Made by a program: the position numbers and the translations under genes. This document shows, in pieces, positions 19,701-31,600 of a stretch of 64,000 nt of DNA; the stretch's first letter is position 1, and each line of letters opens with the position of its first letter. The notes under the pieces are model-generated. The model searched no databases and had not been told where the DNA came from. It was given only the letters and a program-made list of their open reading frames with translations. The stretch lies in NCBI RefSeq assembly GCF_006345805.1, contig NC_043025.1, positions 12,028,001 to 12,092,000 on the forward strand, read 5' to 3'. This stretch comes from Octopus sinensis. Lineage: Eukaryota.

Positions 19701-22700
19701 TGAAAAAGAGTCACATTAAGCAATGTGCTTGTATGTATCCACAGAGGGATGTTCATGGTTGGAGTGTCTTTGATCAGTCCTGTTCAGTCAGGAACAGTAT
19801 GGAGCTAAACAATAATTGTAACTATTAATACTAACTTCTATATGGCCCATTCGTGGGGCATTTAGGGAAGTCTCCTAGAAACAGCAGCCAAATCTCCTCA
19901 TAACTGTATGCAATTAGATAGATAAAAGCAAAAATTATATCCAACTATTTAAGAAGCAAACAACCAGGTTTGTGAGATATTTTCTGGGGTCCTAGGTCTT
20001 TACCGCCTTCCTTGGTCCCTTGACTCTTGATGGAGTTGAAGGAGTGTTTTGTCTTCTTGGGCATTTTGAATCTGGGGGAGAGGATGTCTCCCCGTCGTAG
20101 GTGTGAAGAACATGGATGATTTCTTCCAGAGAAAAAAGCGACAGAGAAGGAAGATAAAGAAGGAACGCAAACCCCAGTGCAGGACAAAGATTTATTAAAC
20201 TGAGCGTGAAAGGACGAAAGAAACCATTTTGACCTTGGCAGGATTTGAACTCTAGGACCCAGATGGAAATAACACGAGACATTTACATCTCAACCCTTGC
20301 CAACTCACTACCTATCAAATATCATAGACTAGCAGTATCGCCCGGCGTTGCTCGGGTTTGTAAGGGAAATAACTATATAGGCATTTTTAGAGAGTTATAG
20401 CCAAAAAATAGCAAAAAAATGCATTAAAAATGGTAAATTTTTTTTTTAATCGTTGACTCATCGTAGACATTTTTAGAGAGTTACTTTCCTTATATAATAG
20501 CGAAAAAATGCATTAAAATGGAAAAAATGATAGTAATTTTTTTTTTAAATTGTTGACTCATCATAGACATTTTTAGAGAGTTACTTCCCTTATATAATAG
20601 CGAAAAAATGCATTAAAATGGAAAAAGATGATCTTAAATTTCTTTAGAAATCGTTAACTCATCGTAGATATTTTTAGAGAGTTACTTCCCTTATATAATA
20701 GCGAAAAAAATGCATTGAAAGTGGAAAAAAATGATGGTAAATTTTTTTTTAAATCGTAGACCCATCGTAGACGCGCGCTAATACCCAGAAGGGCTCAATA
20801 TGAATCACGACTATAAGATACCCGGTTTTGGTTACACTGCACCGCAAAATGTGGGAGTAGTTAGGAATCTAAATCGGAGGAGACAGAGTCTCACACACAC
20901 AACTTCAATTTTATATTTAAAGAATATATACGTTTTTTTCTCTTTTTTTCCCCCTTTTTTTCTAAATCTATTTTTATATTAATTTACTAATGCTGTAGTT
21001 AATTAATTTTAATTTTCTAATTCATTTTTAAATTCCATCGTTAGATATAATTTGGTTTTGCTATTAAGATACTTATTTATTATCATTATTATTATTATTT
21101 TTTTTTTTTGCAAAACTTATGAATGCCATTGATGATAAATGTTATAATAATAACAACAACAATAATAATAATAATAATATTTCTGATAAGGATTCCTTAT
21201 ATAATCCATTACTCTGATGATATTGTATTAATGCTTTATTTTATATGGTTTTTATTTTTGTGACGTGTATTGTGCTAGCATCCAAGATCCGTCTCTGACT
21301 GCGTTGTTTTCCTTCTTCGTCGTTAGGTATGATGGGCGAGGTCATCTCTATGACTTGGCGCCGTACGATGCCTCTAGCTGCAATAGCAGCTGCGTCATGT
21401 CTGACGAAGAAAAGCACATCGAGGCCCTTTGTGACAAGGAACGCTATTTGGAACTACACACCGACATGCAGGAACAAGCGCTGTACGAGGGTGAGTATTG
21501 AAGTTTTCCTGTAATCTTTGATAGATCTTTTAGAGAGTTATAGCCAAAAAATGCATTAACCCCTTACCCGGCAGAAACGAATATATGCGTTTTGACCGAA
21601 ATCGTTTTTTTTCTATCACTGGTGAGTTAACTCGTCAAAAGATAGACTCGCCAAAATCGACAGCAAACGAGTTCTTCGTCTATTATAAACTCTTTTTTGA
21701 CATATACGAGTATATTCGCTCACTTTATACGTCTGGCAGTGACGATTTCTGCCACCTTTCGCTTGAGTAAGGCATTGAAGACCGAGTATGATTTAGTCAC
21801 CTGGAGACAGTCGAAGGGTTGGAAGGCACATTTTATGAATAGAAGTATTCACTTTGTTTTTACGTTGTTTTTTTTATACCTTTATATTATAACCCCACCA
21901 TGTCGAGCTCTGATGATGATAGCGATTATGAAGCTTCTCTTGGAGGGTTGGATACATCTGATGAGAGTGAAAGTTCGTCAGAAGAGTTTTATTCAAGTGA
22001 AGAAACTGAAGATGAGGATGAGGTACTGCCCAAAGCGGTAATTTAAAATCAATATTATTGAATTAAAATTCATAATAAATAAGGTTTGAAATATACCTCG
22101 AAATCACCATTCAAAATAATTGTTGGGTAAGGGGTTAAAAATGGGGAAAAAAATTATGGTAAATTTTCATCCAGTGTGTTAACGATTCCGCCAGCTCACC
22201 ACTTTGGTAATTTGAAATAATGAGAATAAATAAACGTTACATTAGACAGAATAACCTGAATGCTAATGAGTTCAGAATAACAGAGAAACAGGAAATTCCC
22301 TTATTCTTTCAGACTAACACTTCATTGCGGCATCAAATTTAGCATCTTTGGATTTACTGTGGAGAAGAAGAAAGAATTGAGATACATACATACATACACA
22401 AAGAGCAAAGTAAATGGGCGGAGGACAGACAAACGGATTAAGTCGATTACATCGACCCCATTGCGTAACTGGTACTTAATTTATCAATCCCTGAAAGGAT
22501 GAAAGGCAAAGTCGACCTCGGTGGAATTTGAACTCAGAACTTTGCCTTTCATCCTTTCGGGGTCGATAAATTAAGTACCAGTTACGCACTGGGGTCGATG
22601 TAATCTACTTAATCCGTTTGTCTGTCCTCTCTGTGTTTAGCCCCTTGTGGGTAGTAAAGAAATAGGTATTACTTTGTAAATTTCGGTAGCATTTGAGCTC

Positions 22701-28600: not shown

Positions 28601-31600
28601 GATAACTAAGTTATTTTACTAAATTCTTTGTTATATTTAAAGTAATTGAAAGAAACACAGAGCATCTCAACAGAAATATGGTAACAGAAGGGTTAAAATA
28701 TATAATAGAGAATCAATCCTTAACCCTTTCGATACCAACCTGGTTGAAACCACTTTTGGCTCTGAGTACAAATGTCTTGTTTTCATAAGTTTTGGATTAA
28801 AATCTTCCACCAAATCTTAGTCACAATTTATGTTCCTAACACTAGCTGAATGATAACAGAAGAAATATGGTAACAAAAGGGTTAAGATATATAATAGAGA
28901 AACAATTCTTAACCCTTTTGATACCAACCTGGCTGAAACCACTTCTGGCTCTGTAGTACAAATGTCTTGTTTTCATAAGTTTTTGATTAAAACCTTCCAC
29001 CAAACCTTAGTCACAATTTATGTTCCTAACACCAGCTGAATGATAACAGAAGAAATATGGTAACAAAAGGGTTAAGATATATAATAGAGAAACAATTCTT
29101 AACCCTTTTGATACCAACCTGGCTGAAACCACTTCTGGCTCTGAGTACAAATGTCTTGTTTCCATAAGTTCTGAATTAAAATCTTCCACCAAACCTTAGT
29201 CACAATTTATGTTCCTAACACTAGCTTAATGATAACTAAGTTATTTTACTAAATTCTTTGTTATATTTAAATTAATTGAAAGAAACACAGAGCCTCTCAA
29301 CAGAAATATGGTAACAGAAGGGTTAAAATATATAATAGAGAATCAATTCTTAACCCTTTTGATACCAACCTGGCTGAAACCACTTCTGGCTCTGAGTACA
29401 AATGTCTTGTTTTCATAAGTTTTGAATTAAAATCTTCCACCAAACCTTAGTCACAATTTATGTTCCTAACACTAGCTGAATGATAACTAAGTTATTTTAC
29501 TAAATTCTTTGTTATATTTAAAATTAATTGAAAGAAACACAGAGCATCTCAAAATAAATACAGTAACGAAAGGGTTAATGTTGTTTCTGTTTTGACCTGT
29601 AGATGGCGGAGAGGACCAGCACAGTTACCTCCATCCGCTGTTGAGCGTGAAACCTGGCAAAGCCGAGGCCCGCAAACCCATCAAACTTCCTGCTGTTGAC
29701 ATGCACAATACTGCTTATGGGGATCTCGTCCGATCCGTGAAGGCAGCCACGGCACGACATCAGAACGCTAAGAAGAGGTAAGCCATATAAAGTTGTCGAG
29801 CTGGCAGAATCGTTAGCACGCCGGGCGAAATGTGTAGCCGTATTTCGTCTGCCGTTACGTTCTGGGTTCAAATTCCGCCGAGGTCGACTTTGCCTTTCAT
29901 CCTTTTGGGGGTCGATAAATTGAGTACCAGTTACGCATGGGGTTGATATAACCGACTTAATCCGTTTGTCTGTCCTTGTTTGTCCCCTCTGTTTAGCCCC
30001 TTGTGTGGGTAGTAAAGAAATAGGTATTCTGAGTTCAAATTCCGGCGAGGTCGACTTTGCCTTTCATCCTTTTGGGGGTCAATAAATTAAGTACCAGTTA
30101 CGCACTGGAGTCGATATAATCAACTTAATCCGTTTGTCCCCTCTGTGTTTAGCCCCTTGTGGGTAATAAAGAAATAGGCATTTCATCTGCAGTTACGTTC
30201 TGAGTTCAAATTCCACCGTGGTCGACATTGCCTTTCATCCTTTTGGAGGTCGATAAATTAAGTACCAGTTACGCACTGGGGTCGATATAATCGACTTAAT
30301 CCATTTGTCTGTCCTTGTTTAGCCCCTTGTGGGTAGTAAAGAAATAGCCATTTCGTCTGCCGCTACGTTCTTTGTTCAAATTCCGCCGAGGTCGACTTTG
30401 CCTTTCATCCTTTTGGGGGTCAATATAATCGACTTAATCCTTTTGTCTGTCCTTGTTTGTCCCTTCTGTGTTTAGCCCCTTGTGGGTAGTAAAGATATAG
30501 GCGTTTCGTCTGCCGCTACGTTCTGAGTTCAAATTCCACCGAGGTCGACTTTGCTTTTCATCCTTTTGGGGGTCAATAAATTAAGTACCAGTTACGCACT
30601 GGGGTCGATGTAATCGACTTAATCCGTTTGTCTGTCCTCCGCCCATTTACTTTGCTCTTTGTGTATGTATGTCTCAATTCTTTCTTCTTCTTCTCCGTAG
30701 TAAATCCAAAGATGCCGAGACCTCTGACCAGAAACCAACGGTGTCCCCATTCCTATCCGAACCGATCTACCCTAACAACGTACCACCTCCACCCGGAGTG
30801 GAACCGGTTACCCTACCCCCTGCTAATCAACCCGAGCCCCCGGGCACTGATGCCAGTCTCGTATCTGGCCCTTCTGCTGAAACCATCGACCAGGCAGAAA
30901 GTACAGTATATGGGTAAGTAGTTTTAGTTTTATTTATATATTTATTAGATCAGCCCAGCTGTAGCAATGGCTCTTTTGTAGTTTCACGAAGGATATTGTA
31001 TAGGTTGCAGGTATGGCTGTGTGGTGAAGAGATTTGCTTCCAAAACATGGCTTTTTGGGTTCAGTTCCACTGCATGGCAATTTGGGCATCTTTTACTATC
31101 ACTCCAGACTGGCCAAAGCCTTGTAAGTAGATTTGGTGGATAGAAACTGAAAAAAAAAGGCGGCGAGATGGCAGAAATGTTAGCACGCTGGGCGAAATAC
31201 TTTGTGGTATTTCAAACGCCACTGTGTTCAGAGGTCGACTTTGCCTTTCAGCCTTTCGGGGTCGATTAAATAAGTACCAGTTACGCACTGGGGTCAGTAT
31301 TATCGACTTAATCCGTTTGTCCCCTCTCAATGTAGTCCCTTGTGGGCAGTATAGAAATAAGAAAACTAAAAGAAGCCTTTCGTCAGCGCTGCCCTGACTG
31401 GCCTCGTGCCGGCGGCATGTAAAAAGCACCATCCGTTCGTGGCCGTTTGCCAGCCTCGTCTGGCACCTGTGTCGGTGGCACGTAAAAAGCACCCACTACA
31501 CTCACGGAGTGGTTGGCATCAGAAAGGGCATCCAGCCATAGAAACATTGCCAGATCAGACTGGGCCTGATGCAGCCTTCAGGCTTCCCAGACCCCAGTTG

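What the first reader, a model, noticed from the sequence alone, without database searches (positions are those of the whole stretch)
22342..30715. Inverted copy of the exon-7 splice acceptor sits 8 kb upstream in intron 2 (possible editing-complementary or splice-occluding strand)
Seen: 22342-22540 is the reverse complement of 30520-30715. It covers SINE-C, the unique intron-6 pyrimidine tract, the 3' splice site and the first 15 nt of exon 7 (TAAATCCAAAGATGC). The two substitutions at the acceptor (ccgtag vs ccacag) both give G-U pairs in the sense pre-mRNA, so the duplex stays closed over the AG. Established: coleoid cephalopods use extensive ADAR A-to-I editing, which needs intronic complementary strands. 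Inference: the duplex could hide or edit the acceptor A, recode the first Lys codons of exon 7, or loop out exons 3-6 (back-splicing). That would be a transposon-independent RNA switch in a splicing regulator.
Basis: partly seen in the sequence, partly recalled or inferred. Interest (0 to 1): 0.7.

Follow-up and report, generated by a model that had tools for sequence, protein, structure and literature searches.

The report
Inverted duplicate of a splice acceptor
About 200 bases of a cephalopod-type SFSWAP splicing-factor gene (a SINE fragment, the end of intron 6 and the first 15 bases of exon 7) have been copied backwards into intron 2, most likely as a recent by-product of error-prone DNA copying in repeat-rich DNA; the copy could pair with the real splice site in the RNA, but nothing shows that it does anything.

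Summary
The reverse complement of 22342-22540 aligns with 30520-30715 with 9 substitutions and 2 microsatellite indels. The match runs through a SINE fragment (120 nt), 61 nt of non-repeat intron 6 (branch-point region, pyrimidine tract, AG) and 15 nt of exon 7. The gene is an SFSWAP orthologue (DRY_EERY plus two SURP domains).

The copy in intron 2 is the derived one. It is truncated at both ends and lies in a patchwork with a second inverted patch copied from intron 1. Outside one 9-nt gene-conversion cluster it differs from its source by about 2%, so it is young.

The best explanation is a neutral templated inverted micro-duplication (template switching or break repair). The RNA duplex is thermodynamically strong (-335 kcal/mol; -114 for the non-SINE part). 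However, the SINE half of arm A has an adjacent hairpin partner, and the window holds 81 other long inverted pairs. The excess of G·U pairs on the sense strand is not significant. No transcript or cross-species data could be reached. The regulatory-switch reading is possible but untested. Interest is low to moderate.

The parts
22342..22540 (-). Arm A: the inverted, derived copy in intron 2. 22342-22356 is the reverse complement of exon 7 nt 1-15, 22357-22358 of the AG, 22359-22420 of the last 59 nt of intron 6 (with a 6-nt STR gain and a 3-nt STR loss), and 22421-22540 of the SINE fragment (SINE positions ~60-177).
   Evidence: (I1)
30520..30715 (+). Arm B: the source. It comprises the last, 3'-truncated unit of the intron-6 SINE array (30520-30639), the non-repeat 3' end of intron 6 with candidate branch points, pyrimidine tract and AG (30640-30700), and the first 15 nt of exon 7 (30701-30715).
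22541..22670 (+). Sense-orientation SINE (positions ~88-229) abutting arm A with a 2-nt overlap. With the SINE half of arm A it forms a local palindrome / RNA hairpin of about 100 bp (-163 kcal/mol), which competes with the long-range pairing.
   Evidence: (I8)
22298..22341 (.). 44-nt filler between the two inverted patches. No source was found in the window.
22165..22297 (-). Second inverted patch next to arm A: the reverse complement of 19234-19366 (intron 1; unique flank plus SINE head), 95.5% identical. The pair brackets exon 2, and its predicted duplex is -213 kcal/mol.
19234..19366 (+). Source of the second patch. Here the sequence continues into a full-length SINE (19336-19575).
29800..30638 (+). 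Tandem array of about 5 sense SINE units (period 170) that makes up about 840 of the 923 nt of intron 6. Arm B's SINE is its last unit. 30556-30590 is identical to the sibling unit at 30062-30096, which indicates a gene-conversion patch.
   Evidence: (D2)
22873..23036 (-). The only other antisense-orientation copy of this SINE in the window, also in intron 2. It is a weaker partner (about 80% identity) for the intron-6 SINEs.
30701..30913 (+). Exon 7 of the SFSWAP orthologue: 213 nt, entered and left in the same codon phase (2), so skipping it keeps the reading frame.
23588..29777 (+). Exons 3-6, which lie between the arms: E3 23588-23704, E4 24803-24873, E5 27378-27600 (SURP1), E6 29603-29777. 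Together they are 586 nt.

Best explanation
Arm A is a young, probably neutral, templated inverted micro-duplication. During replication or break repair in this SINE-dense gene, a nascent DNA end switched templates. It copied about 200 nt from the opposite strand 8 kb away: the last SINE unit of intron 6, the end of that intron and 15 nt of exon 7. It was then rejoined in intron 2, next to a second inverted patch copied from intron 1.

Shown: the copy exists, it is the derived one, it is part of a patchwork, and it is little diverged.

Inferred: the template-switch mechanism and neutrality.

As a side effect, the SFSWAP pre-mRNA now carries a strand in intron 2 that can pair with the branch-point region, pyrimidine tract, AG and first five codons of exon 7. 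If that pairing forms at all, the expected consequence is the generic one for inverted repeats in an octopus-type transcriptome. That means some promiscuous ADAR hyper-editing of both arms, and perhaps low-level exon-7 skipping or exon 3-6 back-splicing. It does not imply a dedicated switch.
For: Direction of copying: arm B is continuous with its context on both sides, with the SINE array upstream and coding exon 7 downstream. Arm A is truncated at SINE position ~60 and at exon nt 15.

Patchwork: four junctions lie within 380 nt (22165-67, 22297/98, 22341/42, 22539-40), two of them with 2-3 nt overlaps. There are two independent inverted patches from sources 3 kb and 8 kb away, plus a 44-nt filler.

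Same age for both patches: 9/193 versus 6/133 differences (Fisher p = 1.0).

Youth: 5 of the 9 substitutions fall within 9 nt (P = 7e-4), where arm B is identical to its array sibling. That is a conversion patch. The remaining divergence is 4/184 = 2.2%.

No sign of selection for pairing: 6 G·U versus 2 A·C in the sense RNA (p = 0.145). Sense and antisense duplex energies are -335 and -323 kcal/mol.

Base rate: the window has 361 inverted pairs, of which 81 are at least 100 nt and at least 90% identical, and 23 of those lie within 10 kb.

Competition: the SINE half of arm A has an adjacent partner.

Literature: template switching creates reverse-complement repeats (PMC5453318, PMC8794818). Octopus hyper-editing tracks inverted repeats (PMC5625713).
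Against: Neutrality is an inference from the absence of signal in only two sequences. No outgroup or RNA data were reachable.

This is the only repeat match, in either orientation, that overlaps a coding exon in the window.

Both copies keep the AG. All three transitions outside the conversion patch give G·U in the sense RNA (p = 0.125).

At equilibrium the long-range duplex beats the local hairpin (-380.6 versus -238.1 kcal/mol).

The copy sits in intron 2 of a gene whose fly and mammalian orthologues autoregulate by retaining their first two introns (PMC12017769). Transcripts that retain intron 2 would keep arm A.

Microhomologies of 2-3 nt are weak evidence for any particular repair pathway.
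Confidence: 0.6

Rival explanations
1. One reading: a functional long-range RNA duplex. Arm A pairs with the exon-7 acceptor region in the pre-mRNA, occluding U2AF and branch-point recognition or directing ADAR to the acceptor A and the first Lys codons. This tunes exon-7 inclusion (an in-frame 71-aa linker between SURP1 and SURP2) or recodes it.
For: The 73-bp non-SINE duplex is -114 kcal/mol and covers the candidate branch points, pyrimidine tract, AG and 15 exon nt. Locally the non-SINE part of arm A is nearly unstructured (-8 kcal/mol), so it is free to pair. The acceptor A sits in a UAG triplet, which I recall as the preferred ADAR context. Exon 7 is 213 nt and symmetric in phase, so skipping it keeps the frame. 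The two acceptor substitutions give G·U pairs. Orthologues retain intron 2 for autoregulation.
Against: There is no transcript evidence. The copy is young and accidental-looking, and nothing can be said about its conservation. The G·U bias is not significant. The arms are 8 kb apart and lie in different introns. The 2.1-kb intron 2 would normally be spliced out before arm B is transcribed (inference). Known regulatory long-range pairs are short, conserved boxes.
Confidence: 0.1
2. Back-splicing or loop-out substrate. The antisense SINE-containing block in intron 2 pairs with the sense SINE array and acceptor region of intron 6. This brings the exon-6 donor and exon-3 acceptor together, giving a 586-nt circRNA of exons 3-6 or linear skipping of exons 3-6. 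This outcome may occur as a by-product without being selected.
For: The geometry matches inverted-Alu-driven circularization and loop-out skipping (PMC11263572, PMC13019027). The only two antisense copies of this SINE in the window lie in intron 2, while intron 6 holds about five sense copies. The duplex is very stable.
Against: The pair within intron 2 (22421-22540 with 22541-22640) competes and would form first. Linear skipping of 586 nt shifts the frame. No junction reads are available. SINE pairing alone would be enough, so this reading does not explain the extension into the exon.
Confidence: 0.12
3. Transposon-tail reading. The 'unique' 76 nt is the 3' tail of a SINE subfamily. Arms A and B are then two independent insertions, and the exon-7 acceptor and its first five codons are exonized transposon sequence.
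For: The segment contains microsatellite-like runs, (ATGT)n and (CTT)n, typical of SINE tails. Both arms share the same SINE truncation point. Genome-wide copy number could not be checked.
Against: None of the other 15 SINE copies in the window carries this tail. The homology ends at no recognisable element boundary, 15 nt inside an in-frame coding exon. Arm A is 5'-truncated and fused to an inverted SINE. A second, unrelated inverted patch lies beside it.
Confidence: 0.06
4. Assembly artefact: a misplaced or inverted haplotig or a chimeric join through SINE sequence.
For: The locus is extremely repeat-rich. One junction (22539-40) lies inside SINE sequence.
Against: The window contains no N. 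The other junction (22341/42) lies in non-repeat sequence. The two copies differ by 9 substitutions and 2 indels, so they were assembled from different reads. A 2-5% difference is high for alleles.
Confidence: 0.04

Closest known systems
Inverted-repeat Alu (SINE) pairs in flanking introns that drive exon circularization or loop-out exon skipping
   Same: Opposite-orientation SINE copies in two introns of one pre-mRNA bracket exons 3-6. The predicted duplex is long and nearly perfect. An intra-intron partner competes with the cross-intron partner.
   Different: The complementarity runs 76 nt beyond the SINE, through non-repeat intron and into a coding exon. It arose by local duplication, not by two insertions. 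No circRNA or skipped isoform has been observed.
ADAR editing-complementary sequences (for example the intronic ECS of GRIA2 Q/R, or insect Syt1 ECSs)
   Same: An intronic strand complementary to an exon/intron boundary could present exonic adenosines and a splice-site A to ADAR.
   Different: Classical ECSs lie in the adjacent intron within hundreds of nt, are conserved, and support site-selective editing. This strand is 8 kb upstream in another intron, looks young, covers only 15 exon nt, and has no editing evidence.
Conserved long-range RNA structures that control splicing (Dscam docking/selector sites, intronic 'box' pairs), and splice-site-occluding hairpins (for example the MAPT exon 10 stem-loop)
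   Same: Base-pairing that would sequester a branch point, pyrimidine tract and AG could reduce use of that splice site.
   Different: Those elements are short (about 10-30 nt), phylogenetically conserved and supported by covariation. This one is about 200 nt and mostly SINE, and it is known from a single genome.
Template-switch mutations and microhomology-mediated templated insertions (FoSTeS/MMBIR; short template switches of Loytynoja and Goldman)
   Same: A reverse-complement copy of nearby sequence. Several patches from different nearby templates are joined with 0-3 nt overlaps. The process creates new hairpin-forming potential in RNA.
   Different: The source distances (3 and 8 kb) are larger than for the short-range events described in primates and far smaller than for CNV-scale MMBIR. 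The ancestral empty site was not observed.
SFSWAP / su(w^a) autoregulation by retention of its first two introns
   Same: Same gene family (DRY_EERY plus two SURP domains), and the inverted copy lies in intron 2.
   Different: Known autoregulation acts through the protein on intron 1/2 splicing, and no RNA duplex is involved. Whether intron retention occurs in this species is unknown.

Membership tests
SFSWAP (host gene) | N-terminal DRY_EERY domain followed by two SURP modules | tested here: met
   Pfam PF09750 (E = 1.1e-30) and PF01805 in two stretches (E = 5.1e-29) on the spliced exon translations. The open frame is a continuous 450 aa.
SFSWAP (host gene) | C-terminal arginine/serine-rich region | tested here: met
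   RS-rich open frames lie downstream on the same strand at about 42.3-45.9 kb. Their exon boundaries were not mapped.
Inverted SINE pair flanking exons (IRAlu-type) | Two copies of one repeat in opposite orientation within one transcription unit, in introns on either side of one or more exons | tested here: met
   Arm A is in intron 2 (- strand), arm B is in intron 6 (+ strand), and exons 3-6 lie between them.
Inverted SINE pair flanking exons (IRAlu-type) | Stable predicted intermolecular or long-range duplex | tested here: met
   -335 kcal/mol for the full arms. Cofolding with flanks selects the long-range duplex.
Inverted SINE pair flanking exons (IRAlu-type) | Back-spliced or exon-skipped RNA actually produced | not testable with these tools
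   No transcriptome data for this organism were reachable.
ADAR editing-complementary sequence | A-to-G differences between RNA and DNA at the paired adenosines | not testable with these tools
   No RNA reads are available.
ADAR editing-complementary sequence | dsRNA of sufficient length including the target adenosine | tested here: met
   73 bp of non-SINE duplex plus about 120 bp of SINE duplex. The A at 30699 pairs with the U at 22358.
ADAR editing-complementary sequence | Evolutionary conservation of the complementary strand | tested here: inconclusive
   The protein search returned only SURP-exon fragments at 80% identity or less. The metagenome scan for the SINE core found nothing. The low divergence of 2.2% argues for youth rather than conservation.
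Conserved long-range splicing-regulatory RNA structure | Covariation or compensatory substitutions that maintain pairing | tested here: inconclusive
   Only two sequences are available. There are 6 G·U, 2 A·C and 1 C·U mismatches, and the sense-strand bias has p = 0.145.
Template-switch / templated inverted insertion | Reverse-complement copy of a nearby sequence with the source still intact | tested here: met
   Arm A versus arm B, and 22165-22297 versus 19234-19366. Both sources are continuous with their contexts.
Template-switch / templated inverted insertion | Short microhomology at switch points and multiple switches in one locus | tested here: inconclusive
   2-nt and 3-nt overlaps occur at two of four junctions, which is compatible but could be chance. 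Four junctions lie within 380 nt.
Template-switch / templated inverted insertion | Empty ancestral site in an outgroup | not testable with these tools
   No related cephalopod genome is available in any searchable collection.

The most novel reading that the evidence does not exclude
Intron 2 of SFSWAP is one of the two introns that orthologues retain for autoregulation. Here it has acquired a hub of antisense complementarity: one patch to intron 1, bracketing exon 2, and one to the exon-7 acceptor. In intron-2-retaining transcripts this hub would fold back onto the exon-7 3' splice site. That would couple intron retention to ADAR editing or masking of the acceptor, and so to in-frame removal of the SURP1-SURP2 linker. 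It would be a newly born RNA-structure layer on a splicing factor's self-regulation in an animal with exceptionally high ADAR activity.
Probability: 0.07. Interest if true: 0.65.

Novelty: new member of a known kind. Interest (0 to 1): 0.27.

Why it matters
If the neutral reading is right, this is a clean small example of how template switching in SINE-dense cephalopod introns creates new long-range dsRNA potential. Here it happens, unusually, over a functional splice site. That is raw material for editing, circRNA and alternative splicing rather than a finished device. If the pairing does affect exon 7, it would show a regulatory RNA structure being born from a single mutational event in a splicing regulator. 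This is testable with one RNA-seq data set and one minigene.

Tried and rejected
1. Extended homology. Alignments of the flanks past 22342 and 30715, and past 22297 and 19234, show none. A 7-nt echo (GATGCCG) just beyond the exon breakpoint may reflect polymerase stuttering but could be chance.

2. Source of the 44-nt filler 22298-22341. None was found in the window.

3. Rfam families over 20-34 kb. There were no hits at gathering score.

4. Cross-species test. The protein search with exons 7-8 returned only SURP-exon fragments from other animals, at 80% identity or less. An exact scan of metagenome contigs for the SINE core gave 0 loci.

5. Selection for pairing. The wobble/mismatch count and the sense versus antisense energies show no significant signal.

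6. Twin-priming retrotransposition as the origin of the 22421-22670 palindrome. I rejected this because the inverted part overlaps the direct part by about 90 nt and continues into intron and exon sequence that no SINE RNA carries.

7. Arm B derived from arm A. I rejected this because arm B is continuous with the SINE array and with the coding exon.

8. A minus-strand exon at arm A (cacag|TAAATCC...). It has only a weak donor-like GTGTTA and an in-frame stop. No evidence for antisense transcription can be obtained here.

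
Full report
**Observation**

Reading both strands and aligning them confirms the finding. The reverse complement of 22342-22540 matches 30520-30715 over about 196-199 nt, with nine substitutions and two microsatellite indels. The intron-2 copy has six extra bases (ATGTAT) and the real acceptor has three extra bases (CTT). 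The repeat finder lists this pair as the longest inverted repeat in 20-33 kb (I1), and blastn gives E = 1e-77.

The first 120 nt of the match are a SINE fragment, seen in 17 copies or fragments in the window. The remaining 76 nt (30640-30715) are not repetitive. Three sub-strings of this part each occur exactly twice in the window, with none expected by chance. A low-stringency self-BLAST finds no other copy.

**Host gene and the acceptor**

Open frames on the + strand carry a DRY_EERY domain and two SURP modules (Pfam), followed by RS-rich frames. This is an SFSWAP orthologue.

I mapped the first eight coding exons by frame and GT-AG logic:

| Exon | Coordinates |
|---|---|
| E1 | 7810-7991 |
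| E2 | 21327-21490 |
| E3 | 23588-23704 |
| E4 | 24803-24873 |
| E5 | 27378-27600 |
| E6 | 29603-29777 |
| E7 | 30701-30913 |
| E8 | 32782-32986 |

Spliced together they give a stop-free 450-aa protein. The AG at 30699-30700 is therefore the exon-7 acceptor, and the inverted copy lies in intron 2.

Exon 7 is 213 nt and is entered and left in the same phase, so skipping it would keep the reading frame. Intron 6 is 923 nt, and about 840 nt of it is a tandem array of the same SINE with a 170-nt period. The 61 nt shared with arm A are essentially all the non-repeat sequence that intron has at its 3' end.

**Which copy is the original**

Arm B is continuous with its surroundings. Upstream the SINE runs on into the array, and downstream exon 7 continues as coding sequence. 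Arm A is cut at SINE position ~60 and at exon nucleotide 15. So arm A is the copy.

**Structure of the locus around arm A**

Locus A is a patchwork of inverted pieces.

- Arm A abuts, with a 2-nt overlap, a sense-orientation SINE (22541-22670) that begins at SINE position ~88. Together they form a palindrome (I8).
- On the other side, after a 44-nt filler of unknown origin, lies a second inverted patch. 22165-22297 is the reverse complement of 19234-19366 in intron 1 at 95.5% identity. It too consists of unique flank plus the head of a SINE.
- That patch joins a fragment of a 100-nt repeat family with a 3-nt overlap.

Four junctions within 380 nt, two inverted patches drawn from sources 3 and 8 kb away, and tiny junction overlaps together fit serial template switching during replication or break repair. 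That process is known to create reverse-complement repeats (PMC5453318, PMC8794818). The mechanism is inferred, not shown.

**Age of the copy**

The two patches are equally diverged from their sources: 9/193 versus 6/133 differences (Fisher p = 1.0).

Five of the nine arm A/B substitutions fall within 9 nt at 30567-30575 (P = 7e-4 by simulation). There, arm B is identical over 35 nt to a sibling unit of its own array (30062-30096), and arm A resembles the neighbouring SINE. This is best read as one gene-conversion patch.

Outside that patch the arms differ at 4 of 184 sites (2.2%). The duplication is therefore probably recent and lineage-specific (inference).

**Could the RNA pair?**

ViennaRNA gives the following energies:

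| Structure | Energy (kcal/mol) |
|---|---|
| Full arms as a dimer | -335 |
| 73-bp non-SINE part alone | -114 |
| Non-SINE part of arm A folded alone | -8 |
| Local hairpin of about 100 bp, SINE half of arm A with adjacent SINE | -163 |
| Cofold of 22330-22700 with 30480-30760 (chooses the long-range duplex) | -380.6 |
| The same two segments folded separately, summed | -238.1 |

Thermodynamics therefore permits the long-range structure. Kinetics argues against it. The local hairpin forms as soon as it is transcribed. Arm B appears 8 kb later, and the 2.1-kb intron 2 would usually be removed by then (inference from general co-transcriptional splicing behaviour).

The antisense duplex is almost as stable (-323 kcal/mol). 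There is thus no detectable signature of selection for pairing.

**Base rate**

The window contains 361 inverted pairs at E < 1e-10. Of these, 81 are at least 100 nt long and at least 90% identical, and 23 of those lie within 10 kb of each other. Several are more than twice as long as this pair.

Octopus is reported to have the strongest hyper-editing signal among the animals surveyed, attributed to abundant, long, nearly perfect dsRNA from inverted repeats (PMC5625713). Generic editing of such pairs is therefore expected and is not evidence of a switch.

What is unusual is that, among all repeat matches in the window in either orientation, this is the only one that overlaps a coding exon. It is also notable that the only two antisense copies of this SINE lie in intron 2, while the other copies and fragments, including about five in intron 6, are in sense orientation.

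**Reading**

The most likely account (about 0.6) is a young, neutral, templated inverted micro-duplication. Its dsRNA potential is a by-product.

- The duplex would bury the candidate branch points, pyrimidine tract and AG.
- The acceptor A sits in a UAG context.
- Exon 7 can be skipped in frame.
- SFSWAP orthologues autoregulate by retaining their first two introns (PMC12017769 citing Zachar et al.). Arm A would therefore persist in exactly those transcripts.

The geometry also fits inverted-SINE-driven circularization or loop-out of exons 3-6 (PMC11263572, PMC13019027). SINE pairing alone would suffice for that, and an intra-intron competitor exists. A transposon-tail origin and a misassembly are each unlikely, for the reasons given under rival explanations.

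**Limits**

No transcriptome, no reads and no related cephalopod genome were reachable. Conservation, editing, exon skipping and back-splicing are all untested. The decisive tests are listed separately.

Noticed in passing
window 19234-19366 and 22165-22297: A second inverted pair (133 nt, 95.5% identical, predicted duplex -213 kcal/mol) brackets exon 2 (21327-21490). One arm is in intron 1 and the other in intron 2. These are the two introns that SFSWAP orthologues are reported to retain for autoregulation.
   Followed up: partly
window 22310-22415 (+ strand): The sense strand of locus A carries pseudo-exon-like signals: ...ttattctttcag|ACTAAC (also a perfect branch-point-like ACTAAC), a GAA-rich purine run, and AAA|GTAAAT (the reverse complement of the intron-6 ATTTAC|TTT). 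Read from exon 2, the frame hits stop codons. This is a motif-level observation only. It could be a poison-exon candidate or nothing.
   Followed up: no
window 21560-22134: A 575-nt insertion splits a 60-nt sequence that is contiguous at 11752-11811. It carries a Kozak-like ccaccATG followed by a 48-aa acidic Ser/Asp/Glu-rich open frame (21901-22043) that has no Pfam hit.
   Followed up: partly
window 29800-30638: Intron 6 (923 nt) consists almost entirely of a tandem array of about 5 SINE units (period 170). The array starts 20 nt after the exon-6 donor and ends 61 nt before the exon-7 acceptor. Units show internal gene conversion: 35 nt are identical between 30062-30096 and 30556-30590.
   Followed up: partly
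window, whole (SINE census): There is a strong orientation bias in this SINE family within the gene. About 15 copies or fragments are in sense orientation and only 2 are antisense, both in intron 2. Tandem arrays inflate the sense count.
   Followed up: partly
window 30628-30921: Exon 7 is open in two overlapping forward frames (97-aa and 82-aa ORFs). Only the KSKDAE... frame fits the phases of exons 6 and 8.
   Followed up: yes
window 32364-32699, 33234-33571 and 51299-51636: Two 338-nt copies of another repeat flank exon 8 in the same orientation. Both are 95-96% complementary to an inverted copy about 18 kb downstream.
   Followed up: no
window 37984-38426 and 40281-40720: This is the strongest inverted pair in the window (448 nt, 91% identical, 1.9 kb apart). 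The conserved '[12 protein letters not shown]...[11 protein letters not shown]' exon (about 38.77-38.97 kb) lies between its arms. On sequence grounds it is a better candidate for dsRNA, editing or loop-out than the reported pair.
   Followed up: no
window 47.7-48.5 kb and 48.5-49.3 kb: An apparent tandem duplication of about 820 bp lies within a downstream intron. Identical 77-aa open frames occur at 48266 and 49085.
   Followed up: no
window 28514-29583 and 25000-27100: Large intronic tandem arrays are present: a 190/251-nt period array at 94% identity in intron 5, and a 67-nt period array in intron 4.
   Followed up: no
window 59658-59732 (-): ARAGORN calls a tRNA-Met (CAT) on the minus strand. 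It may be a genuine tRNA gene or a tRNA-derived SINE head.
   Followed up: no
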